In this document: piece by piece, positions 48,500-59,182 of the stretch | Layout: every line of letters starts with the position of its first letter | Numbering within the stretch: the first letter of the stretch is position 1 | Source of the DNA: Thecamonas trahens ATCC 50062 | Taxonomy: Eukaryota > Protista > Apusomonadida | DNA: 64,000 bases | Direction: 5' to 3' | NCBI RefSeq assembly: GCF_000142905.1 | Contig: NW_013657614.1 | Span: forward strand, 84,727 to 148,726 | The notes under the pieces: model-generated | What the model was told of the DNA's origin: nothing | Database searches by the model: none | What the model saw: only the letters and a program-made list of their open reading frames with translations | Position numbers and translations under genes: made by a program

Positions 48500-51400
48500 T
48501 CACCAGACGTTGTATCGCTTTGGGCAGTTGTGGGCGTTCCGAAGCACTCCATGAACGAGTGGGCTCAGGCACGACGAGCACCTTGAGGCGAGCTGGACAC
48601 CGTGGACAACATGCAGGTGCGAGGCAAGCGAGACTTGGATGGCATGGTGTATGCCACAGATCGGGCACGGCCACAGCTCGTTGACATGAAAGCCGACCGA
48701 TGCCTGACCTATGACGATCGCAAGCAAGCGGTGACTGACACGCTCGCCAAGCTTGCAGGCGCTTGTGAGCATCTGCTCGAGCTCAAAGAACACCTCGGGT
48801 GAGAGTTGCGACCAGTGGCGAGCGACATAATGCGCGTCTGCGTCGGGCCAGTACCGCATTCGACGGGCAAGCTCGGGCGGAACGGGCGTGGCGGCATTGT
48901 CGCTGGGGAGCGGCTCGTCGTTGGCGAGCAAGACGGCCCACGGCGCCTCGAGCTCGAGCATGGTCTCGATGCCGAGCCAGGGTGGGAGGAGTAGAGCGGC
49001 GCGGAGGGTGTCGAGCCTGGCCTGCACAAGCTCTGTGCCTGCTTTGGCCACCACCAGCAAATGCTGCAGCACGCTATCAGCCATGGGCTCGGGCTCGGCC
49101 ACAAAGGCGTTGATGACAGTGGTAAGGCCTTCGGCAGAAGGCAGTGAGTCGACAAGGCCAGCATGGACCAGAAACCGTAGCGCACACCAGAGCTTGGCAA
49201 GGCGAAAGGCGACGCCAACTTCGGCCTCTACCTGCTCCAGCTCTGTCGCAGCATCCGGTGTCTCCAGCCAGGTTTCGATGTCCCTGAGCGGACGGCTGAC
49301 CAAGCTGGTGAGCGCGTCAGTGGTGCCGAGTGCACACTGCGCCATGGTCATGACCTCGCACACAAATGGAAGCTGGGCCATGGCCCACGTGCGCAAGCGC
49401 ACGATGTTGTCGCATGCCTCGGCCACCGATATTGTGCCACCACTTTGACACGCGGCCAGCCAATAGCAGCCGGCCGCTTGCACTCCTAGGGCCGGCTTGT
49501 TGGCCTGCATTGCCATCCGCCCGGTGTGGTACACCAGACCCGTAGCGGTGCCGAGAAGCGAGCCCGGGACCTGCTGTTTGGCTGCGAGGCCGGCCATCCT
49601 ACCTAGGGCGGTGGTGACTGTGTGGTACATGTGACGTGACCCGTCCATCCACTGCAACTGTTGCCCCCTGGGAATGAGGCGGTCATGGTCAGAGGCGAGG
49701 CCGGGCCAAGCCTTTGCGGCCGTTTTGGCAACTCGCTCCAGCCGCCGGAGCAAGGTCTTCAAGCCGACCCTATCGAGCGAGGCGACATCAGCGAGGACCG
49801 TCTGGACCGCAGCCTGGCCAACAGACAACCCAAAGTGCTCGACGACAGCTGCGCAGTGGGCAAAAGACTCGGGACTAAACTTGGACCGGTACCCACCAAA
49901 CCGCAGAAACTGTGTAATCTCCGGCTCGAGGAAGCGCAGGACTGGCGGCAAGTCAATCGAGTTCCCACGCGTCGAGAGCTTGGTCACCACCAGCGAGCCG
50001 ATCGCCTTTTCGCGAGCCAGCTGCGAGGCTCTCGCAGCACCGTAGAGGCCAACCGCAATGAGCGCCTCCATCCGGAGCCGCGGACCGGCGACAAGCGCCA
50101 GCAGCGACGCCGCCTCGTCCTCGACCCGCTTGAGCTTCTCGGCAAACGGCAGGTCCGATTTGTCGTTGATGTACCGGCCGAGCTGGGCCGCGTTGCGGAT
50201 GCCGACAATCTTGAGGTCGTGGCGGGCGTCGAGTGCGTGCTTGGCGACGTCGCGGAGCTTGGCCCGGTCGACAACCCGCGAGGTGATGAGTGTGGCGGCT
50301 TCTTCGGTGAGCTTGGCGAGGTTGATCATCGGCGACGACGCGATGCGGCCGACCGAGTTGGTGGAAAAGACGTGAACAAGCTTGCCCATGGTCGCCGCGC
50401 TCACCGCAGGCTCATCCTCAAAAATAGACTCGTACACAGCCTTGGTCATCCATGTCGGAATCGAGGTTCCCGCCACAATCGCTCGAAACGCCTTCTTCTC
50501 CTTGACGTCCACCACGGCGTACTTGGGCACATCTGGAAAGCTGAGCTGGAGCTCAAGTTCGGGGCCAAAGCCTTCCCGGAACGCTGCCTCGCGCTCGCTG
50601 TACCGCTTGGCAGCATCGGCCATGTCGCTGCAAAGGGCGACAAGCCGAGCGGTCTCGGCCTCGTTGTCCAGCTCACGGGCTTCCACGATGCCACGGCAGA
50701 CAGAGATCGCGTTGTGGAGGCCCGGCAAGAAAGAGTACGGAATGCAAGTAATCGTGCCCATCGCGTCGAGTCGCGCTTGCTGTATGACTAGATGACGAGC
50801 AAGCGTCTCCAGCTCGATAGGCGTCGGCTCGGCGCACGAAATGAAGAGAAAGTCGCGGACAAGCCACGGGCTGGACCTGGCCACCAGAGGCGCCACTGCG
50901 TCGACGGGCTGACCGATGTGGCGCTCCAGGTCTGTCAACCGCCGCGGGGCGGCCTCAATGCGCCGCGGCAGCTCAGTAAAGAGCGGCAGCAAGATGGAGG
51001 TCATGATGTTGGTCGTCGGGTCGCGCTCCAGCGCCATCCGCACTTGTGTGGTTACCATGTTGGTGAGGGCACGGACCGGATTCCGAATGCCAAACACGGA
51101 ATCGCATCTCTTGGACCATGTTGCCCTGCAGTGGGCGATGGCTGTCGTAAGCTTGTCGTCGTAGTTGAAAACCGAGCAATGCTGGGCGAGAAAGACTGCT
51201 ATCTGGATGAGCTTGAAGAGCGCGCGCGGCACTCCTGGGCGGGCACTCTTGACCTTCCGCACATCTGCGAGTGCGGTGTATGCAACAAACATGCCGCTGG
51301 TGTCGCTCTCGCCAAGTTCGGCCTCGATGGCGCTGGCAGCCGCGGGCTGCAGTTCAAGCGCCAGCAGTCGGCGCAGCAACAGCCGGTCGTGTGCGATGCG

Positions 51401-51835
51401 CCACATCTGCGAGCATGTCGTCGCGAGAGCACGATACGACGTCCGATCGAGAAAGCCCATAAGATATACAACAATCTCGTCCGGGAGAGTGGCGAGCGGC
51501 GAGGCGAGCGCGCTGCCGCCGCCGCCGACGCCGAGTCCCGCCACAAACTGGGCTGAGGTTCCCCACGAGCCCGCCGTGCTTGAAATGCCCAATGCCAGGT
51601 TGTACGTGTGCTCGTAGATGTCGGAAGCCATGGCGCTCGAGAGCGACTGCGGCATGCCGTGGATGATCGAGGAGCCGAGGCCGGTGACGAGCATCCACGC
51701 ATCAGCGAGGAGTGCGACATGTGCCTCGACGCCCTTGTACACCATACCATCTCTCTCACCAACCAGCCGCATCATGCTCCACGGCTGCGGAGCCAGGACT
51801 CCTCCTGCCAAGAACCGCTTGACCTGAGCATTCAT
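48500..51835 (-). CDS. Large F-box protein with C-terminal C2H2-type zinc finger(s)
   Basis: Probable ATG 51835. LATLPDEIVVYLMGFL...LATTCSQMWRIA F-box; CPIC-x12-H-x4-H, then CSSC...HNC. Confidence 0.7.
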   Translation of the reverse strand: MNAQVKRFLAGGVLAPQPWSMMRLVGERDGMVYKGVEAHVALLADAWMLVTGLGSSIIHGMPQSLSSAMASDIYEHTYNLALGISSTAGSWGTSAQFVAGLGVGGGGSALASPLATLPDEIVVYLMGFLDRTSYRALATTCSQMWRIAHDRLLLRRLLALELQPAAASAIEAELGESDTSGMFVAYTALADVRKVKSARPGVPRALFKLIQIAVFLAQHCSVFNYDDKLTTAIAHCRATWSKRCDSVFGIRNPVRALTNMVTTQVRMALERDPTTNIMTSILLPLFTELPRRIEAAPRRLTDLERHIGQPVDAVAPLVARSSPWLVRDFLFISCAEPTPIELETLARHLVIQQARLDAMGTITCIPYSFLPGLHNAISVCRGIVEARELDNEAETARLVALCSDMADAAKRYSEREAAFREGFGPELELQLSFPDVPKYAVVDVKEKKAFRAIVAGTSIPTWMTKAVYESIFEDEPAVSAATMGKLVHVFSTNSVGRIASSPMINLAKLTEEAATLITSRVVDRAKLRDVAKHALDARHDLKIVGIRNAAQLGRYINDKSDLPFAEKLKRVEDEAASLLALVAGPRLRMEALIAVGLYGAARASQLAREKAIGSLVVTKLSTRGNSIDLPPVLRFLEPEITQFLRFGGYRSKFSPESFAHCAAVVEHFGLSVGQAAVQTVLADVASLDRVGLKTLLRRLERVAKTAAKAWPGLASDHDRLIPRGQQLQWMDGSRHMYHTVTTALGRMAGLAAKQQVPGSLLGTATGLVYHTGRMAMQANKPALGVQAAGCYWLAACQSGGTISVAEACDNIVRLRTWAMAQLPFVCEVMTMAQCALGTTDALTSLVSRPLRDIETWLETPDAATELEQVEAEVGVAFRLAKLWCALRFLVHAGLVDSLPSAEGLTTVINAFVAEPEPMADSVLQHLLVVAKAGTELVQARLDTLRAALLLPPWLGIETMLELEAPWAVLLANDEPLPSDNAATPVPPELARRMRYWPDADAHYVARHWSQLSPEVFFELEQMLTSACKLGERVSHRLLAIVIGQASVGFHVNELWPCPICGIHHAIQVSLASHLHVVHGVQLASRCSSCLSPLVHGVLRNAHNCPKRYNVW

Positions 51836-52242
51836 GGTGTGAGCGAGCGAGGCAGCGGGTAGGGGAGCGAGCGAGTGGCGGCAGGTGGGGTGGGTGGTGA
51901 CGGACTTGAGGCAGTATGCCCTTTGGCCGTCAAAGTGAGCAAAGGTGCGAGGGGAGGATGTGGGGAGGGAGACAGAATGAAGAAGACGATGGCGGACGTA
52001 TGCGTCTTGGGGAATGTAGAGACGGAAGGGGGGGGGGGGGGGGGGGGGGAGGGGGGGGAGGGGGGGGAGTGCGAGTGTGTGTGTTTGTGGTTGGCTTATG
52101 TGTGGTGGGAGTGAGGTGGTGAGCCGACGAACAATCACGACCTTTTCGGAAACATCAGGTGCGGGCCGGACTCTGGGAAGCCAGAGCTAGGGAACACACA
52201 GTGGGCGACGACGGCAGGGTGGTGGGTGCAAAGGCGGCGAGT

Positions 52243-54351
52243 TTACCGCTTGCGCGAGGCGTTGAGGGCGAGGTAGGAGAAGATGAGGAAGATCGCCATG
52301 TACACGCCGAGGATGCCCGAGTTGAAACCGATGTTTCCGTCCTCCTCGGCCTCGAACAGATCAAGGACGGCCTGCCCGTTGGGAACAGGGCAGGTGCCGT
52401 TGATGGCCTCGGAGGCGTCGCAGGTGAAGGTGAGGTCCTTGAGCTCGTTGATGAGCACGCCGTTAAAGGCGTACTTCATGAACGAAAAGTAGCGCAGCCA
52501 GCGGATGCCGACCCAGATCGACTCGGGCTTGACGAGGAACGAGGCAAAGAGGGTCGACGGGAGGACAACGCCCGGAGCGAGCGCGTTGGCAGCATCCGAA
52601 TCGCCGGTCGCCGCAGAGAGGAGGAGGCCGAGCCAAGTGCCAAAGAGCGAGAGCTGGTATGCAAAGCCGACAAAGATGAGGAACTTCTCGAGATCGGCCT
52701 GCAGGCCGACCATAAAGTAGACCTGGAAGACGTAGAGGACTAGGTAGAAGGCCTGGAACGGCAGATCGGCAATGACCTTGGCGGCAAGGTACGTGACCGT
52801 GCTGTAGAGGCCGTCCTGTGACTCGCGCATGAACACCGCCCGCTCCGGAATGAAGAGGGTGACAGCAGCCTGCATGCCAGAGAAGACAAGCATGATGGTG
52901 ACGAGGAAGATGAGGCCGGCGCGGTCGAGACCACCAGTCTGTCCGCGGTCGATCTGGTACCAGATGGCAGCAATGAGGAAGCCGAGGATGATCATCTGTC
53001 CGGCGCGGGCCCATGAGGCCTGCTTGTTGCGGACCTGGAGCATAATGTTGCGCTTGACGAGCTGCGCGAGCTTGACGATCGGCGACGGGCGGTGGCCATT
53101 GAACTCGTCGAGATGAAGCGATCCAGCCTGCGAGAGCGAGGCCGACGACGAGTCCGGGACGCCCATGCCGGCTGCGCGTGCGGCGGCAGTGATGGCCTGG
53201 ATGCGCGCGAGCGACGAGGAGGCCGAGGTAGACGCCGACGAGCCGCCGTGAGCCGCCTCGTCGTCGTTCAGCACCAGCGCTGAGCGCGAGAGGATCTCAA
53301 TGGTAAAGTCAGCCGGGTTGAGTCCGCGCGGGCATTCGTAGCCGATGTCCTCCAGGAAGGGGAGGAGGCCGGTGACCTTGCCCGAGTACGCGACCTGGCC
53401 GCCGGCGAGTGCCATGACGTTGTCGAAGACGTGCAACATCTCGTTGGAGGCCTGCGAGACCGAGGCCAGGATGGTCATGTTGTTCTTCTTGGCGAGCTTG
53501 CGGAGGTTGACGATGACGGCCTCGGCAGTGGCGGCGTCGAGGCCTGCGGTGGGATCGTCGACGTACAGGATCTGCGGAGCGGTGATGAGCGACTGGGCGA
53601 TGTTGGCCCGCTTCCGCTCGCCACCGGAGAGGCCGCGCTTGAGGCCAGGGACGCCGACGAGGGTGTCGCCGACCTTGGCGATGCCGAGGACGTTGAGGAC
53701 CGACTCGACACGCTCGTTCCGATCCTCGGCCGACATGGTCGATGGGAGCGAGAGACGGGCGAGGAACTGCAGGTTCTCGCGCGGCGTCGAGTCGGCGAGC
53801 ATGATGTCTTCCTGCTGAACGTAGCCCGAGATGGCCATAACGTCCGACGGATCAAGCTCCATGCCGTTGTACAGCACCGAGCCGGACGACTCGAGCGCCG
53901 ACGGAAGACGACCGGCGAGGACGTCGAGGAGGACCGACTTGCCCGACGACGACGGGCCGAGGAGCATGGTGAGCTCGCCCGGAACAAGCTTCAGCGAGAC
54001 ATTGTCGAGGAGGACGATCTCATCCGTGCCGGGCCGGCCGCGGCACTTGTCAAGCAGCGACTTCTTGGCCGGGACCTTGACGGTGATGTTGGAGGCCTCA
54101 ATGATGACACCGGCGGCACCGCCTGACTCGGCGTCGTAGCCGTAGCCAGCGGAGTCGGCTGATGAGGCCGAGCTCGATGAGGCCGACGAGGCCGACGAGG
54201 CCGACGAAGCCGACGAGGCCGACGAGGCCGACGAGGCCGACGACGCGCTGTCAAGCGGAATGGCTCCGCCGGTGGAGCTCGACGTCGACGTCGACGACTC
54301 TTGCTGCTCCATGACTGCAGAGGCCGCGGAAGGGGCAACACGCAGCGGCAT
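52243..54351 (-). CDS. ABCG half-transporter A (canonical signature; degenerate Walker B and H-loop)
   Basis: NBD-TMD order; GPSSSGKS, YVQQED, LSGGERKR, YVDDPTAG, SVSQAS; ER.VF.RE and six TMs. Alternative start at 54312. Confidence 0.9.
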   Translation of the reverse strand: MPLRVAPSAASAVMEQQESSTSTSSSTGGAIPLDSASSASSASSASSASSASSASSASSSSASSADSAGYGYDAESGGAAGVIIEASNITVKVPAKKSLLDKCRGRPGTDEIVLLDNVSLKLVPGELTMLLGPSSSGKSVLLDVLAGRLPSALESSGSVLYNGMELDPSDVMAISGYVQQEDIMLADSTPRENLQFLARLSLPSTMSAEDRNERVESVLNVLGIAKVGDTLVGVPGLKRGLSGGERKRANIAQSLITAPQILYVDDPTAGLDAATAEAVIVNLRKLAKKNNMTILASVSQASNEMLHVFDNVMALAGGQVAYSGKVTGLLPFLEDIGYECPRGLNPADFTIEILSRSALVLNDDEAAHGGSSASTSASSSLARIQAITAAARAAGMGVPDSSSASLSQAGSLHLDEFNGHRPSPIVKLAQLVKRNIMLQVRNKQASWARAGQMIILGFLIAAIWYQIDRGQTGGLDRAGLIFLVTIMLVFSGMQAAVTLFIPERAVFMRESQDGLYSTVTYLAAKVIADLPFQAFYLVLYVFQVYFMVGLQADLEKFLIFVGFAYQLSLFGTWLGLLLSAATGDSDAANALAPGVVLPSTLFASFLVKPESIWVGIRWLRYFSFMKYAFNGVLINELKDLTFTCDASEAINGTCPVPNGQAVLDLFEAEEDGNIGFNSGILGVYMAIFLIFSYLALNASRKR

Positions 54352-54847
54352 GAGAAGATAGAGAGAATGTGCGATGTGACGTGGCGAAGGTGGCGGAGGG
54401 TGCGGATAACGGGGGTGAGTTTTGTGCTGCGCTCGCGTCATTGGCAGCCAACCCTCCGCCGGTTTGCCGATTCGCCGCCTTGTCCCGCAAGTCCACTCAT
54501 AAGCACTGTCCAGGCAAGATAGGCGACAGCTAGGATGATGTAACACTGGAACTAGATAGACCCAAGGTTGCGCTTTCTAGCAGTCTCACTATCAGTATAT
54601 TCCTAGGCTGCATGGCTATGGTAGGGGCTGTGACAAGTTTCGCCGCCTTCTCCCGCAAGCGTGCTCAAATGGCCAATTTGTCGCGTTGCGGCAAGCGACC
54701 GATTGCGGTACAAAAGGTGAGGAATTGCGGGTCGCGGCGGGTGTGGCGGGAAAGGCACAGACCATTTCCCTCGAGCAGCAACCAGGTTGTGTGCGCTTGT
54801 AGTGACAAAGGCTTTCTGAGACTCTCTTGACATCGACGTTACTTCCC
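54352..54847. promoter_or_regulatory. Putative bidirectional promoter of the ABCG pair
   Basis: About 500 bp of lower-GC DNA between divergent ATGs. Confidence 0.5.
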
Positions 54848-56806
54848 ATGTCATCTACTTCGTACACGAGCTCGTCGGCTGACTCTGCTGCAAGCGGTCC
54901 AGCGAGCGGCAGTGAGTCGGACTCGTACACGTTTGTGACAGCTGGCTCAAGCAATGAGAACGACGAGGAGATTGTGCTCGAGTTTAACAACATCAAGGTG
55001 TGGGTGGAGAACTTCAAGGCGACCAAGGCCGATGGCTCGACCGAGGTCATCAAGCGGCGCGACATTCTCCGCGGCGTGTCAGGCAAGGTCGAGTCGGGCC
55101 AGATGACGATGCTGATGGGGGCGAGTGGGGCGGGCAAGACCACGCTGTTCAACGTCCTTGCCGGGCGGGCGCACACGGTCGAGTCCTCGGGCTCGATCTT
55201 GGTCAATGGAAAGCACTTTGGCCTCGCCGAGTTCCAGGAGATCTCGGCGTACGTGACGCAGGACGCGACGTTCCTCAACTCGATGACACCGGACGACATT
55301 CTGGGCTTCCGCGCCAACATGCTCCTTCCGTACTCGATGTCTGCCGAGGAAAAGCAGGCGCGGGTTGACGACGTCATCGAGCTGCTCGGCCTGGAGGAGG
55401 TGCGCAACGTGCGGCTCGGCGAGCCGGGCGTCTCAGCGCGTGGCCTCAACTTTGTCCAGCGCAAGAAGCTCAACGTCGCGGCGGCGCTGCTGGTCAAGCC
55501 GCGGATCCTGTTTGTGGACGAGCCGACGACCGGCCTGGACGCCGCGATGGCCAAGTCGGTCATGCTCTCGCTGCAGCGGGTGGCCAACTCGCGGAAGCTC
55601 GTCGTCTTCTGCACCATTCATCAGCCGTCGGTCTTTGTGTACAACCTCTTTGACCAGGCGCTCATCATGGCGCTGGGACAGATTGCGTACTCGGGCTCGG
55701 TCGACAACATTGTGCCCCACCTCGACAAGCTCGGCTACGAGTGCGACGAGTTCAAGAACCCAGCGGACCACGTGATCCAGGTGCTCGACTCGCGTGACGG
55801 CGACGAGAAGCGGGTTCAGAAGCTTATCGATGCATACCACGCCGACGCCTCGTCGTCGTCGTCGTATGCCGGGCCCAGCGAAGTTGTTGCCGAGATCAAC
55901 GACGACGGTGCGCCGATGACGCGATCCGATCGCATTCCGTGGTACGGGCGGATGTATCAGCTGACGAAGCGTGCGCTCAAGGTGACGCTGTACAACGACA
56001 AGGCGCTCAAGGCGTCTGTGGGCCAGGCCATTGTCTTTGGCATCCTCATCGGCATCATCTACTCGCTCGACAACTCACAGGCCGGCGCGACTGATCGCGT
56101 CGGGCTGCTCTTCCTCACCACGACCAACGCAATCTTCCTCTCGCTGCAGGGCTCGGTCTTTGTGCTCATCGCCGAGCGTGCGGTCTTCCTCCGCGAGGTG
56201 GCTGACGGCATCTACTCGATGCCTGCCTACCTGGTGAGCAAGGTGGCGTCGGATCTTCCGTTCCAGGTCCTGTACCAGCTCCTCTTCTCGGTCATCGTCT
56301 ACTTTACCACCGGCCTGCAGCAGTCGCTCGGTCGGTTCCTCATCTTTGTTCTTGTCCAGTCGCTCGTGGCACTCGTCGGCTCGAACCTCGGCCTCGTCCT
56401 CTCGGCCTTTACCGGCGACGCGGCGACGTCGACCGCGCTCGCGCCGGTCATCATCGCTCCGTCGATGATGACGGCCGGTGTGCTCATCTCGACTGAGGCC
56501 ATCCCGGTCTTCCTCCGCTGGCTCAAGCACGTCTCGATCCTCCGCTACGCCTTTACCGCCCTCCTCCTCAACGAGGCCGAGGACGCGCTCGTCTTCCATT
56601 GCACGCCCGAGCTGCAGCTGCCCAACGGCCTCTGCCCCATCAACACTGGCAACGAGCTCATCGCCCAGCGCAATGCCAACCAGGAGCCGACCGGCATCTG
56701 GTCGCGGGTCTTTATCCTTGTCGGCTTCTACGTCTTTACCGTCTTTGTTGCCTACCTCGGCCTCCTCTTCTCTGTCCGCAACCAGCGGAAGACCAAGCGG
56801 TCGTGA
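54848..56806 (+). CDS. ABCG half-transporter B (canonical Walker A/B and H-loop; degenerate signature)
   Basis: GASGAGKTT, YVTQD, GLNFVQRKK in place of LSGGE, FVDEPTTG, TIHQPS; ER.VF.RE and six TMs. Confidence 0.9.
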   Translation: MSSTSYTSSSADSAASGPASGSESDSYTFVTAGSSNENDEEIVLEFNNIKVWVENFKATKADGSTEVIKRRDILRGVSGKVESGQMTMLMGASGAGKTTLFNVLAGRAHTVESSGSILVNGKHFGLAEFQEISAYVTQDATFLNSMTPDDILGFRANMLLPYSMSAEEKQARVDDVIELLGLEEVRNVRLGEPGVSARGLNFVQRKKLNVAAALLVKPRILFVDEPTTGLDAAMAKSVMLSLQRVANSRKLVVFCTIHQPSVFVYNLFDQALIMALGQIAYSGSVDNIVPHLDKLGYECDEFKNPADHVIQVLDSRDGDEKRVQKLIDAYHADASSSSSYAGPSEVVAEINDDGAPMTRSDRIPWYGRMYQLTKRALKVTLYNDKALKASVGQAIVFGILIGIIYSLDNSQAGATDRVGLLFLTTTNAIFLSLQGSVFVLIAERAVFLREVADGIYSMPAYLVSKVASDLPFQVLYQLLFSVIVYFTTGLQQSLGRFLIFVLVQSLVALVGSNLGLVLSAFTGDAATSTALAPVIIAPSMMTAGVLISTEAIPVFLRWLKHVSILRYAFTALLLNEAEDALVFHCTPELQLPNGLCPINTGNELIAQRNANQEPTGIWSRVFILVGFYVFTVFVAYLGLLFSVRNQRKTKRS

Positions 56807-57091
56807 TTAACACATATCACAATGTGGCGATGTATTATCCCTTTGTGTCACCGGTTGCAGCTTGCTGCGATTGCAGATGAAATGGTGTTCATCGGTGCCG
56901 CATGGCTTGCTGCCGTGCCTTTTCCCCCCCTCGAGTCTGATTGGGTACCCGTCCAGCCGCCGGCGCCGCCGGTGCCACCGATGCTGGCAGGCAGGAAGCC
57001 AAGCCAGCCAGCCTGCCTGCCTGCCTGCCAGCCGGCTTCGTCCACCGCACCACTCACCACTCTGTCAGCCACCTATCTCCAGACACCTATC

Positions 57092-58249
57092 ATGCTCCGG
57101 GTGTGCGTGCGGCAGGTACGGGCCATGGGCGGGACAATGTCTGTCTCGGGCCTTTCATCCCTCACCGCCTTTGAACAGGCGGTTGGCCAGACGCCGCTGC
57201 TCCGGCTGCGCGGCGCGTCTGAGGCTGCCGGCTGCAACGTGTACGCCAAGGCCGAGTACGCCAATCCAGGTGGTTCGGTCAAGGACCGCCCGGCCCTGTC
57301 GATGATCTTGGGTGCAGAGCGTGACGGGCATCTGGTGCGTGGCGAGGAGGGTGTTATCGTCGAAGGCACTGCCGGTAACACAGGCATCGGCCTCGCCCTG
57401 GCCGGCCGGGCTCTCGGCTACAAGGTTCTCATCTGCATCGCGTCGAGCCAGTCACAGGAGAAGAAGGACATGCTGCGTTGGGCTGGTGCCGAGCTCGTCG
57501 AGGTTCCGCCGGTCCCCTACGCAGATCCGAACAACTACGTCCACGTTGCTGCACGCCTCGCCGACGCCATCGCCAACAAGCTCCCGGTCAACTCGTTCTA
57601 CGCCAACCAGTGGGACAACCTCGACAATCGCGCCGCCCACGCGTCCACCACTGGGCCCGAAATCATGCGCCAGATTGCCGACGCCGAGCGGTCGCGTGAC
57701 GGCGAGCCCGGTGTTGTCACCGCCTTCTCTGCTGCTATGGGCACCGGCGGCACGCTCACGGGCGTCGCCGAAGCCCTGCGCGCCGCCAACCCGCACGTCC
57801 ACATTGCCCTCACTGACCCACACGGCGCAGGTCTCTACCGCTACTACACAGAGGGCGAACTCAAGGCGGTCGGCTCGTCCATCTCCGAGGGCATCGGCCA
57901 GAACCGCATCACAGGTAACATGGTCGGCTTTGAGCCGGACGCCGCCCACGAGATCTCCGACGCAGACATGATGCTCGCGCTTGAGATTTTGCAGAGCTGC
58001 GACGGCCTTGCCATGGGCACCTCGTCCGGCATTAACGTCGCCGGCGCCATCCAAGTCGGCCGCGAGCTCGGTCCGGATGCCAACGTCGTCACCATCCTCT
58101 GCGACGTCGGCGCTCGCTACGCTGGCAAGCTCTACTCGCCCAACTTTCTTCGCTCGGTCTCGCTCACTCCGCCCCCCTGGATTGATGAGGACGACGCAGG
58201 CCTTGGCCCGCCGTGGTCGGATCTCCTTGCCGACGTCCTTGCCCAGTAG
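57092..58249 (+). CDS. cysK: Cysteine synthase (O-acetylserine thiol-lyase family, PLP-dependent)
   Basis: KAEYANPGGSVKDR (PLP Lys), EGTAGNTG, NQWDN..N, GTGGT, EGIG, SSG.N, VTILCD; possible mitochondrial presequence MLRVCVRQVR. Confidence 0.9.
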   Translation: MLRVCVRQVRAMGGTMSVSGLSSLTAFEQAVGQTPLLRLRGASEAAGCNVYAKAEYANPGGSVKDRPALSMILGAERDGHLVRGEEGVIVEGTAGNTGIGLALAGRALGYKVLICIASSQSQEKKDMLRWAGAELVEVPPVPYADPNNYVHVAARLADAIANKLPVNSFYANQWDNLDNRAAHASTTGPEIMRQIADAERSRDGEPGVVTAFSAAMGTGGTLTGVAEALRAANPHVHIALTDPHGAGLYRYYTEGELKAVGSSISEGIGQNRITGNMVGFEPDAAHEISDADMMLALEILQSCDGLAMGTSSGINVAGAIQVGRELGPDANVVTILCDVGARYAGKLYSPNFLRSVSLTPPPWIDEDDAGLGPPWSDLLADVLAQ

Positions 58250-58345: not shown

Positions 58346-59182
58346 ATGCGGGCGTCCCAGACCAAGATCGGATTCATGCTGCGATCAGCGGCGCGCGATG
58401 GCGACTGCGAGGCCTTCCTCTTCCTCTGGCAGCAAGCCGGCGCGGCGGCGCAAACACTGCGATATCCGCGCGACGAGGGCCCGCTGTTTCCGGCGCTTGC
58501 CTCACGACACGATGCGATGATTGACATGCTCCTTGCGCCGCCGATCTGCGCCTCGGCGACCAACGCGTCGGCAACCTCGGGCTCGACCCCGCTGCACTGG
58601 GCGGCGGCGGCGGGCTATCTGTACGGCGTGCGGCAGCTGCTCGCCGCGGGCGCCGACGTTTACGCGGCCAATGCCGCCGGCGACACGCCGTACGACGTCC
58701 TCGGCTCGTTTGCGGCCGACGAGGGCTATGACGCCGACGGACACCTTTCGCTGGAGGCTGCAGGTGTGGCTATGCTCATCCACACCGCCGCCGCAGCCCG
58801 TGCTCGCGGCTGGTCGCCCGCCCGCCACCGGCACTTTCCGGCTGCCACCCGTGCCGCCATCTGGACCGCACTCGTCATCGCCAAGGCAAGCACTCTCGGG
58901 ACAAATCCTGCCCAGGGCACACCCGGCGAGCGGCGTCCGAGCTATGCTGCCCACTGCTGTCTCTACAAGCTCCCGAACGAGCTGCTGCATCTCATCTTTC
59001 GCTTTGTCGCCGCCGCCCCCATGGACGCCGACCCGTCCCGGTTCCCCGCCCCGGACATGTACCCGCCGCAAATGCTGGCCATGATGCTGGACCCTGTGGA
59101 AGCCGCTGATGATGACGCTGTCGATCGCGCCCAGATTCTGGCCATGATTGAGGCCTCGGACAGCTCTACAGAGGACAGCTGA
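58346..59182 (+). CDS. Ankyrin-repeat protein with C-terminal F-box-like motif
   Basis: TPLHWAAAAG...LLAAGADV...GDTP; WSPARH..FP...R; LYKLPNELLHLIFRFV. Confidence 0.7.
   Translation: MRASQTKIGFMLRSAARDGDCEAFLFLWQQAGAAAQTLRYPRDEGPLFPALASRHDAMIDMLLAPPICASATNASATSGSTPLHWAAAAGYLYGVRQLLAAGADVYAANAAGDTPYDVLGSFAADEGYDADGHLSLEAAGVAMLIHTAAAARARGWSPARHRHFPAATRAAIWTALVIAKASTLGTNPAQGTPGERRPSYAAHCCLYKLPNELLHLIFRFVAAAPMDADPSRFPAPDMYPPQMLAMMLDPVEAADDDAVDRAQILAMIEASDSSTEDS

What the first reader, a model, noticed from the sequence alone, without database searches (positions are those of the whole stretch)
52243..56806. Head-to-head ABCG pair with reciprocal ATPase-site degeneracy (ABCG5/ABCG8 logic in a protist)
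Seen: gene A has LSGGE but Walker B VDD (catalytic E to D) and H-loop SVSQ (H to S). Gene B has intact GASGAGKT, DEP and TIHQ but signature LNFVQ. Established: each ABC site pairs one subunit's Walker/H-loop with the other's signature, so an A/B heterodimer has one fully consensus site and one doubly dead site, while either homodimer is crippled. Vertebrate ABCG5/G8 are likewise head-to-head, obligate heterodimers with one active site. Inference: a co-regulated obligate heterodimer (lipid/sterol exporter?) that is either deeply homologous to G5/G8 or convergent; the degenerate residues differ from those of G8.
Basis: partly seen in the sequence, partly recalled or inferred. Interest (0 to 1): 0.8.

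Follow-up and report, generated by a model that had tools for sequence, protein, structure and literature searches.

The report
Divergent ABCG gene pair, one active site
Two neighbouring, oppositely oriented membrane-pump genes of the protist Thecamonas trahens have complementary defects, so only a pump built from one of each has a working ATP site. The same paired design recurs in related marine protists and appears to have arisen independently of the animal cholesterol pump ABCG5/ABCG8.

Summary
Gene A (52243-54351, minus strand) and gene B (54848-56806, plus strand) are intact, intronless ABCG half-transporters, 36% identical and 496 bp apart, head to head.

- **Gene A:** keeps the signature LSGGE but has Walker B VDD, H-loop SVSQ and Walker A GPSSSGKS.
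- **Gene B:** keeps GASGAGKT, DEP and TIHQPS but has the signature LNFVQ.
- **Not an error:** all 8 A-type and all 10 B-type homologues show the same reciprocal pattern, while 7 nearest canonical relatives show none.
- **Linkage:** six linked pairs each hold one A and one B, head to head, 0.48-0.68 kb apart. Three are in T. trahens (this locus, a dispersed copy on C11, an old paralogue on C31) and three are on marine metagenome contigs.
- **Origin:** A and B are sister clades (100/99) nested among canonical protist half-transporters, and their sub-trees mirror each other.
- **Relation to PDR:** the degeneracy resembles fungal Pdr5, but an AU test rejects kinship with PDR halves (p 1.5e-6).
- **Relation to G5/G8:** profile scores show no special affinity.

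Best reading: an obligate heterodimer with one catalytic site, convergent with G5/G8 and PDR.

The parts
52243..54351 (-). Gene A: A-type ABCG half-transporter (NBD then TMD). 702 aa from the ATG at 54351, or 689 aa from the ATG at 54312; intronless. It has a Ser-rich low-complexity N-terminus.
   Evidence: ORF. Pfam ABC_tran plus ABC2_membrane. ABCG2 match at 6.7e-80. The upstream ATG is conserved in the C11 copy.
53935..53958 (-). Gene A Walker A, GPSSSGKS. Lys and Ser are kept; the fourth-position Gly is replaced by Ser.
   Evidence: The Gly-to-Ser change occurs only in the two T. trahens pair-1 copies.
53608..53631 (-). Gene A consensus signature, LSGGERKR. It would complete the active site together with gene B's Walker motifs.
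   Evidence: LSGGER is kept in 8 of 8 A-type sequences.
53536..53571 (-). Gene A Walker B and D-loop, ILYVDDPTAGLD. The catalytic Glu is replaced by Asp (D253).
   Evidence: The A-type family has D, N, S or G at this position.
53446..53463 (-). Gene A H-loop, SVSQAS. The His is replaced by Ser (S286).
   Evidence: It is S or A in 8 of 8 A-type sequences.
54352..54847 (.). Shared 496-bp divergent intergenic region, the presumed bidirectional promoter. GC drops to about 0.53-0.57 against about 0.63 in the flanks.
   Evidence: The other five pairs have spacers of comparable length (477-676 bp). A transcript-like JGI contig starts at 54770, 78 nt upstream of gene B's ATG.
54471..54488 (+). First copy of a repeated element, TTCGCCGCCTTGTCCCGC(AAG), in the spacer.
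   Evidence: The pattern was derived after seeing the sequences, so this is only a candidate cis-element.
54639..54656 (+). Second copy of the repeated element, TTCGCCGCCTTCTCCCGC(AAG), 168 bp from the first.
   Evidence: One strict copy also lies in the C11 spacer.
54848..56806 (+). Gene B: B-type ABCG half-transporter, 652 aa, intronless.
   Evidence: ORF. Pfam. ABCG1 match at 2.3e-79.
55118..55141 (+). Gene B consensus Walker A, GASGAGKT.
55445..55468 (+). Gene B degenerate signature, LNFVQRKK, in place of LSGGERKR.
   Evidence: It is degenerate and variable in 10 of 10 B-type sequences. Compare Pdr5 NBD2 LNVEQ (PMC8421411).
55505..55540 (+). Gene B consensus Walker B and D-loop, ILFVDEPTTGLD (catalytic E225).
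55613..55630 (+). Gene B consensus H-loop, TIHQPS (H258).
   Evidence: TIHQPS is kept in 10 of 10 B-type sequences.

Best explanation
Genes A and B encode the two halves of an obligate heterodimeric ABCG (type II) exporter with built-in catalytic asymmetry.

In an ABC dimer each ATP site is made of Walker A, Walker B, Q-loop and H-loop from one subunit and the signature from the other.
- In A/B, the consensus site is B's Walker A (GASGAGKT), Walker B Glu (E225) and H-loop His (H258) together with A's LSGGE. This site should hydrolyse ATP.
- The second site collects every defect: A's GPSSSGKS, VDD and SVSQ together with B's LNFVQ. It keeps the Walker A Lys, the Walker B Asp and the Q-loop Gln. 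It therefore probably still binds ATP but hydrolyses it poorly or not at all, acting as a structural or regulatory hinge as in Pdr5, TAP1/2 or ABCG5/G8.
- An A/A or B/B dimer would have no consensus site.

The two genes share a roughly 0.5-kb divergent spacer, which should give balanced co-expression.

The pair arose by duplication of a canonical protist ABCG half-transporter, followed by reciprocal degeneration. It has since been inherited and duplicated as a two-gene unit. It is thus a third, independent origin of one-site asymmetry within ABCG, besides animal G5/G8 and the fused PDR pumps.

Shown here: the motifs, their conservation, the linkage and the phylogeny. Inferred: physical pairing, ATP binding without hydrolysis at the degenerate site, co-regulation, and the substrate (unknown; probably a lipid or a xenobiotic, as is usual for ABCG).
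For: 1. Motifs are as described.
2. The reciprocal pattern holds in 8 of 8 A-type and 10 of 10 B-type sequences at 36-58% identity to the window genes. It is absent from all 7 nearest canonical relatives and from every other complete T. trahens ABCG half examined.
3. The residues of the predicted active site are strictly kept (A: LSGGER; B: the Walker A Gly/Lys core, DE, the H-loop His). The residues of the dead site drift (Glu to D, N, S or G; signature NFVQ, TFAQ, SLAQ, NTAA, NVAT, STTQ). This is the pattern expected for one constrained and one relaxed site.
4. There are six linked pairs, each one A plus one B, head to head with 477-676 bp spacers. They are window C66, C11 and C31 of the same genome and metagenome contigs L001, L028 and L030/L031/L032.
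5. The C11 copy resembles the window only across the two coding regions, so the pair moved as a unit. dN/dS is 0.23 for A/A' and 0.29 for B/B'.
6. In the careful IQ-TREE run (LG+C20), clade A has 100/100 support, clade B 100/100 and A+B 100/99. Their sister is the canonical pair P0195 plus T. trahens L006 (95/88). The sub-clades mirror each other: (A2, P0145) against (B2, L028_B), and (winA, P0002, P0003) against (winB, L001_B, P0021).
7. The same logic is established for G5/G8 (PMC7756502) and Pdr5 (PMC8421411).
Against:
- There are no expression data. The only hint is one transcript-like JGI contig for gene B, from a sample of unverified type.
- No clearly conserved promoter element is shared by the spacers.
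- A Walker B Asp can support residual hydrolysis in some ABC proteins (from established knowledge), so 'dead' may be too strong.
- Each half could in principle also pair with a canonical ABCG half or with the paralogous pair.
- Two family members on Logan contigs (P0004, P0026) show no head-to-head partner within the short contig called, and no DNA was available.
Confidence: 0.78

Rival explanations
1. Deep homology. The A/B pair is the apusomonad orthologue of animal ABCG8/ABCG5, inherited head to head from the common ancestor of apusomonads and opisthokonts. The degenerate residues would have been replaced since then.
For: - The gene arrangement and the reciprocal logic are the same as in G5/G8.
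- Apusomonads are generally placed as close relatives of opisthokonts (from established knowledge; one search gives only the taxonomy).
- The G5/G8 head-to-head arrangement is conserved across animals (PMC3724490).
- With single sequences, A scores slightly better on G8 than on G5 and B slightly better on G5 than on G8.
Against: - A and B are each other's closest relatives (100/99), nested among canonical protist halves that include T. trahens L006 and an Ancyromonas protein.
- With family profiles, both A and B score G2 > G1 > G5 > G8. A scores G5 322 and G8 309 bits; B scores 319 and 301. A canonical control profile gives the same order with higher scores (368 and 355).
- The A profile scores B-type proteins at about 500 bits but G8 at only 309.
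- The degenerate residues differ: G8 has Walker A Lys to Arg and G5 has ISTGE, against Walker B and H-loop changes here.
- Caveat: G5 and G8 are the lowest-scoring ABCG structures for every ABCG query tried, and they could not be put in a tree.
Confidence: 0.06
2. Split or ancestral PDR. A and B correspond to the N- and C-halves of full-size PDR pumps, either as an unfused progenitor or as a secondarily split gene.
For: - The degeneracy pattern matches Pdr5. Pdr5 NBD1 keeps VSGGE but has Walker B Asn and a deviant H-loop, and NBD2 has the signature LNVEQ. Compare B's LNFVQ and LNVAT, and A2's VDN.
- For full-size ABCGs, the N-half leans about 37 bits further toward the A profile than the C-half does.
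Against: - PDR N-halves and C-halves (Cavenderia, Capsaspora, a Stygamoeba-like protein and others) form their own clade, far from A+B.
- Forcing A together with PDR N-halves costs 127.8 lnL units, AU p = 1.5e-6.
- The score lean is explained by the motif states themselves.
Confidence: 0.02
3. Promiscuous partners. A and B do not pair exclusively with each other. Each combines with canonical ABCG halves or cross-pairs between paralogous pairs (A1-B2, A2-B1), as Drosophila White does with Scarlet or Brown.
For: - A paired with a canonical half, or B paired with a canonical half, would still have one consensus site.
- T. trahens has three pairs and several canonical halves.
Against: - Strict one-A-plus-one-B linkage in six loci, co-duplication and mirrored trees point to co-evolving partners.
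- Concentrating all defects in a single site is explained only if A meets B.
Confidence: 0.1
4. Artefact or decay. The substitutions are sequencing errors, or gene A is a decaying pseudogene and B works alone.
For: - The C11 copy of A has a 1-nt deletion.
Against: - The window copy is an intact 2.1-kb ORF.
- The same substitutions recur in independent assemblies at 40-55% identity.
- dN/dS is 0.23.
- A's signature is strictly kept, which makes sense only if it serves a partner's Walker site.
- A B/B homodimer would have two signature-less sites.
Confidence: 0.02

Closest known systems
Animal ABCG5/ABCG8 (sterolins)
   Same: - Two ABCG half-transporter genes lie head to head on a short shared spacer.
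- Degeneracy is reciprocal, so the heterodimer has one consensus and one non-catalytic ATP site.
- The subunit with the defective Walker side (G8, like A) keeps the signature, and the other (G5, like B) loses it (PMC7756502; PMC3724490).
   Different: - Different residues are hit. G8 has Walker A GSSGCGRAS (Lys to Arg) and G5 has ISTGE. Here the Walker B Glu and the H-loop His are lost in A, the SGG is lost in B, and the Walker A Lys is kept.
- No phylogenetic or profile affinity was found.
- The substrate is unknown.
Fungal, plant and amoebozoan full-size PDR pumps (Pdr5, Cdr1)
   Same: The degeneracy pattern is the same. The first NBD has a consensus signature but has lost the Walker B Glu (Asn in Pdr5, as in paralogue A2) and the H-loop His. 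The second NBD has consensus Walker motifs and H-loop but the signature LNVEQ (PMC8421411; PMC7756269).
   Different: - PDRs are single polypeptides of about 1,500 aa, whereas here there are two genes on opposite strands.
- A separate origin is shown by the tree and the AU test.
- The Walker A Lys is kept here but is Cys in Pdr5.
Trichomonas vaginalis ABCA half-transporter gene pairs
   Same: This is a protist with linked inverted pairs of half-transporter genes. One member has consensus motifs and the other degenerate motifs, and the pairs duplicate as units (PMC3378599).
   Different: - It is a different subfamily (ABCA, TMD-NBD order).
- There the two groups track the N- and C-halves of full-length ABCAs, whereas here the A/B split is independent of any full-size relative.
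Heterodimeric ABC exporters with one degenerate site (TAP1/TAP2, TM287/288, TmrAB)
   Same: They follow the same functional principle: one catalytic and one non-catalytic site, with Walker B and H-loop changes in one subunit and a signature change in the other (PMC7756269).
   Different: They are type I (ABCB-like) exporters with TMD-NBD order, and they are unrelated at the TMD level.

Membership tests
ABCG (WBC-type) half-transporter | A single NBD lies N-terminal to a single ABC-2 type TMD of about 6 helices. | tested here: met
   Pfam ABC_tran then ABC2_membrane in both proteins. About 6 hydrophobic segments in the C-terminal half.
ABCG (WBC-type) half-transporter | Full-length sequence homology to solved ABCG structures. 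| tested here: met
   A matches ABCG2 at 6.7e-80 and B matches ABCG1 at 2.3e-79, over about 580 residues each.
ABCG5/ABCG8 orthologues | Head-to-head gene pair with a short shared spacer. | tested here: met
   The spacer is 496 bp, and the arrangement is conserved in 6 pairs.
ABCG5/ABCG8 orthologues | G8-type Walker A (Lys to Arg, GSSGCGRAS) and G5-type signature (ISTGE). | tested here: not met
   A keeps the Walker A Lys and loses the Walker B Glu and the H-loop His instead. B has LNFVQ (motifs of G5/G8 from PMC7756502).
ABCG5/ABCG8 orthologues | Phylogenetic grouping of A with G8 and of B with G5. | tested here: inconclusive
   G5 and G8 sequences could not be obtained by reference, so there is no joint tree. 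Indirect tests argue against it. A and B are sisters. The profiles give G2 > G1 > G5 > G8 for both, as does a canonical control profile.
ABCG5/ABCG8 orthologues | Sterol export as an obligate heterodimer. | not testable with these tools
PDR full-size ABCG | NBD-TMD-NBD-TMD in one polypeptide. | tested here: not met
   These are two separate ORFs on opposite strands.
PDR full-size ABCG | A degenerate NBS1: the first NBD has Walker B and H-loop changes, and the second NBD has an LNVEQ-type signature. | tested here: met
   The same pattern is distributed over A and B (Pdr5 motifs).
PDR full-size ABCG | Common descent with the PDR N- and C-halves. | tested here: not met
   They form separate clades. 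The AU test rejects A plus PDR-N (p 1.5e-6).
Asymmetric heterodimeric ABC exporter (functional class) | One consensus and one degenerate composite ATP site in the heterodimer, and none in either homodimer. | tested here: met
   This follows from the motif inventory of A and B and of 18 family members.
Asymmetric heterodimeric ABC exporter (functional class) | Physical heterodimer formation. | not testable with these tools

The most novel reading that the evidence does not exclude
The head-to-head asymmetric pair could be truly homologous to animal ABCG5/ABCG8. It would then date to the common ancestor of apusomonads and opisthokonts, with later turnover of which catalytic residues are broken. 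G5/G8-type sterol or lipid export by a one-site heterodimer would then be an ancient trait predating animals, not an animal invention. My evidence argues against this: A and B are sisters nested among canonical halves, and they show no profile affinity to G5/G8. It is not excluded, because G5 and G8 are long-branch proteins and could not be included in a tree.
Probability: 0.06. Interest if true: 0.8.

Novelty: new variant of a known kind. Interest (0 to 1): 0.45.

Why it matters
One-site asymmetry is a recurring but poorly understood feature of ABC exporters. Why a non-hydrolytic ATP site is kept, and what it does, is still debated for Pdr5, CFTR, TAP and G5/G8.

This family would be a third independent origin of that asymmetry inside the ABCG subfamily. 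It combines the gene organisation of G5/G8 with the residue pattern of PDR pumps. That argues that reciprocal degeneration into one live and one dead site is a favoured outcome whenever an ABCG half-transporter duplicates.

Practically, it offers a natural 'split Pdr5-like' system. The two halves can be expressed, mutated and mixed separately, and T. trahens even supplies two diverged pairs for partner-swap tests. It also corrects the public gene model of the C11 copy.

The finding is solid but incremental. The principle is known in animals, in fungi and, for ABCA, in Trichomonas.

Tried and rejected
- **Complex prediction** (NBD of A plus NBD of B with 2 ATP and 2 Mg) was reported unavailable, so nothing was folded. 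No heterodimer-versus-homodimer modelling was possible.
- **G5/G8 in a tree.** The joint phylogeny was left out and replaced by profile-score comparisons with a control profile. Single-sequence PDB rankings are weak evidence, because G5 and G8 were the lowest-scoring ABCG structures for every ABCG query tried.
- **Split-PDR hypothesis.** I raised it myself from the LNFVQ/LNVEQ resemblance. It was tested and rejected.
- **PF06422 (PDR_CDR) search of the genome** found nothing, and its controls rang nowhere either, so it is uninformative.
- **The sigma-70 promoter and terminator scan** does not apply to a eukaryote and found nothing.
- **Shared k-mers and local alignments of the four spacers** gave no robust conserved element. 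The repeated TTCGCCG...CCGC element was defined after the fact.
- **FastTree on all 406 half-units** timed out, so subsets were used.
- **Contigs of P0004 and P0026** had no DNA available.
- **Taxonomic placement of the metagenome contigs** through neighbouring genes failed. One gene had no hit in T. trahens and the other matched at only 28% identity.
- **Exact look-up of the window's gene B product** found no record.
- **Literature searches** for Thecamonas or apusomonad ABCG, or for protist ABCG heterodimers, found no prior description.

Full report
**Where and what.** The window is contig C66 of a 28.7-Mb, 131-contig assembly. Two NCBI proteins of Thecamonas trahens ATCC 50062 (P0001 and P0020) sit on a 571,036-bp contig, and P0023 sits on a 395,032-bp contig. 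These are exactly the lengths of C11 and C31 of this assembly. The genome is therefore T. trahens, an apusomonad, as earlier notes of the scan also said.

The region holds two long intronless ORFs on opposite strands.
- Gene A is 52243-54546 on the minus strand. Its probable start is the ATG at 54351, which is conserved in frame and preceded by a stop in the C11 copy. An alternative start lies at 54312.
- Gene B is 54848-56806 on the plus strand.

Both have Pfam ABC_tran followed by ABC2_membrane. Both match solved ABCG2 and ABCG1 structures at about 1e-80 over nearly their whole length. They are 36% identical to each other. The spacer between the two start codons is 496 bp and has lower GC than the flanks.

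Gene A has Walker A GPSSSGKS, signature LSGGERKR, Walker B ILYVDDP and H-loop SVSQAS. Gene B has GASGAGKT, LNFVQRKK, ILFVDEP and TIHQPS.

**It is a conserved family feature, not an error.** Word-based and exhaustive searches recovered the relatives.
- A-type relatives: P0002, P0003 and P0004 (45-55% identical to A), plus the more distant P0145 and P0161.
- B-type relatives: P0021 to P0026 (36-58% identical to B).

In one alignment of 25 half-transporters:
- All 8 A-type sequences keep LSGGER, lack the Walker B Glu (D in 5, and N, S and G once each) and lack the H-loop His (S or A).
- All 10 B-type sequences keep Walker A, DE and the H-loop His, but have a degenerate and variable signature (NFVQ, NFVD, TFAQ, SLAQ, NTAA, NVAT, STTQ).
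- All 7 nearest canonical relatives keep the catalytic residues of every motif.

Thus the residues of the predicted live site are frozen and those of the predicted dead site drift. This is the signature of one constrained and one relaxed site.

**Linkage.** The T. trahens genome holds three such pairs.
- C66 is the window.
- C11:462398-466909 is a recent copy and corresponds to the NCBI models P0001 and P0020.
- C31 is an old paralogous pair. A2 has Walker B VDN and H-loop ALSQGA, and B2 (P0023) has the signature LTFAQ.

The C11 copy resembles the window only across the two coding regions (92.7% and 98.4% nucleotide identity). The spacer and flanks are unalignable. It is therefore a dispersed duplicate of the two-gene unit, not a haplotig. 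Since that duplication dN/dS is 0.23 for A and 0.29 for B.

Three marine metagenome contigs carry the same arrangement.
- L001 has P0002 head to head with a 633-aa B-type protein, signature LNFVD.
- L028 has P0145 with a 606-aa B-type protein, signature LSLAQ.
- L030, L031 and L032 have P0161 with a 619-aa B-type protein, signature LSTTQ.

The spacers are 477-676 bp throughout. All other complete T. trahens ABCG halves examined are canonical. That includes two adjacent genes on C10 whose coordinates suggest a tail-to-tail arrangement.

**Origin.** A careful IQ-TREE run (LG+C20+F+G4, 29 rows, 609 columns) gives these supports:
- clade A 100/100;
- clade B 100/100;
- A+B 100/99;
- sister group the canonical halves P0195 plus T. 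trahens L006, 95/88.

Next outward come P0269 and then a clade that holds P0251 and P0220, whose cluster includes an Ancyromonas sigmoides protein.

The internal topologies mirror each other. (A2, P0145) corresponds to (B2, L028_B), and (winA, P0002, P0003) corresponds to (winB, L001_B, P0021). The pair therefore arose once, by duplication of a canonical protist half-transporter, and has co-diversified since.

**Relation to PDR pumps.** The degeneracy pattern is that of Pdr5. Its NBD1 has VSGGE with Walker B Asn and a deviant H-loop, and its NBD2 has LNVEQ (PMC8421411; PMC7756269). I therefore tested whether A/B are a split or ancestral PDR.

The exhaustive profile search returned many full-size ABCGs. 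Their N-halves lean toward the A profile relative to their C-halves. In trees, however, PDR N- and C-halves form their own clade, far from A+B. These include Cavenderia, Capsaspora and a Stygamoeba-like protein. Forcing A together with PDR-N is rejected (delta lnL 127.8, AU p 1.5e-6). The resemblance is convergent.

**Relation to ABCG5/G8.** G5/G8 are head to head and share a promoter, and this arrangement holds across animals. Their degenerate site is made by G8's Walker A (Lys to Arg) and G5's ISTGE, which are different residues from those changed here.

I could not obtain G5/G8 sequences by reference, so the joint tree was left out. The indirect evidence is as follows.

| Profile | G2 | G1 | G5 | G8 |
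|---|---|---|---|---|
| A family | 371 | 338 | 322 | 309 |
| B family | 403 | 389 | 319 | 301 |
| Canonical control | 437 | 456 | 368 | 355 |

All values are bit scores against the human proteins. G5 scores above G8 with all three profiles, and the control profile scores both higher than the A or B profile does. There is therefore no A-to-G8 or B-to-G5 reciprocity and no special affinity. The A profile scores B-type proteins at about 500 bits, far above G8. Together with the sister relationship of A and B, this favours convergence. I leave about 6% for deep homology, because G5 and G8 are the lowest-scoring ABCG structures for any ABCG query tried.

**Mechanism (inferred).** In the A/B dimer, B's Walker A, E225, H258 and Q-loop together with A's LSGGE form a consensus catalytic site. 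A's GPSSSGKS, D253 and S286 together with B's LNFVQ form a site that keeps the ATP-binding residues (Walker A Lys, Walker B Asp, Q-loop Gln). That site lacks the general base, the H-loop His and the signature Ser-Gly-Gly. It probably holds ATP without turnover, as described for Pdr5 and other asymmetric exporters. Neither homodimer has a consensus site. The shared spacer should ensure balanced expression.

The substrate cannot be inferred. The sterol guess rests only on the analogy with G5/G8.

**Limits.** One JGI contig (L034) starts 78 nt upstream of gene B's ATG and ends 112 nt after the stop, so it looks like a transcript. I could not verify the sample type.

**Novelty.** I found no description of this family in the searchable literature. 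A close conceptual precedent exists in Trichomonas. There, ABCA half-transporter genes are linked as inverted pairs with one consensus and one degenerate member (PMC3378599).

I rate it a new variant of a known kind. It is an independently evolved, head-to-head, PDR-patterned ABCG heterodimer family, known so far from T. trahens and unidentified marine eukaryotes. The interest is moderate.

Noticed in passing
G000 C11:462398-466909 (L024; NCBI models P0001 and P0020): This is a second, dispersed copy of the whole pair. Its gene A has a 1-nt deletion at codon ~321 (CTGGAGGAC to CTGG-GGAC). The NCBI model bridges the deletion and skips 27 conserved residues (VTGLLPFLEDIGYECPRGLNPADFTIE). It is either an assembly error or an incipient pseudogene.
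   Followed up: partly
window 52243-56806 against C11: The two duplicated genes differ very unequally. dS is 0.12-0.14 for A/A' but 0.02 for B/B', and the first ~25 codons of B are unrelated between the copies. This suggests recent gene conversion of B only.
   Followed up: partly
L034 (JGI 3300031121 contig, 2140 bp): This is a transcript-like contig of gene B. Its 5' 78 nt and coding region match the window copy (98.0%), but its 3' flank matches the C11 copy. It is either a third allele in an environmental strain or an assembly chimera of the two paralogues.
   Followed up: partly
window 54471-54488 and 54639-54656: Two direct copies of TTCGCCGCCTT(G/C)TCCCGCAAG lie 168 bp apart in the spacer, and one strict copy lies in the C11 spacer. 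The window holds 3 matches to the loose pattern against 0.07 expected, but the pattern was defined after seeing the sequences.
   Followed up: partly
window 54130-54270 (N-terminus of gene A): There is a Ser-Ala-Ser (SAS) coding microsatellite at the N-terminus of A. It differs by a 24-nt indel from the C11 copy. It also swamped the word-based protein search, which returned only 18 hits.
   Followed up: no
G000 loci L011 (C56), L018/L021 (C52), L020 (C10), L012 (C20): Several T. trahens ABCG genes encode a long Cys-rich, partly EGF-like N-terminal region and an extra hydrophobic helix ahead of the NBD-TMD unit. This is an unusual architecture with seven predicted membrane segments.
   Followed up: no
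G000 C10:405812-412152 (L020, L017): Two canonical ABCG genes lie next to each other, apparently tail to tail by their coordinates. They show that ABCG adjacency without reciprocal degeneracy also occurs in this genome.
   Followed up: no
window 48500-52138 (-), 56822-58249 (+), 58346-59182 (+): The flanking genes are a 1,212-aa protein with a weak F-box-like match, a PLP-dependent (PALP) enzyme with an ~115-aa N-terminal extension, and a small ankyrin-repeat protein. None of them is shared with the other pair loci.
   Followed up: partly
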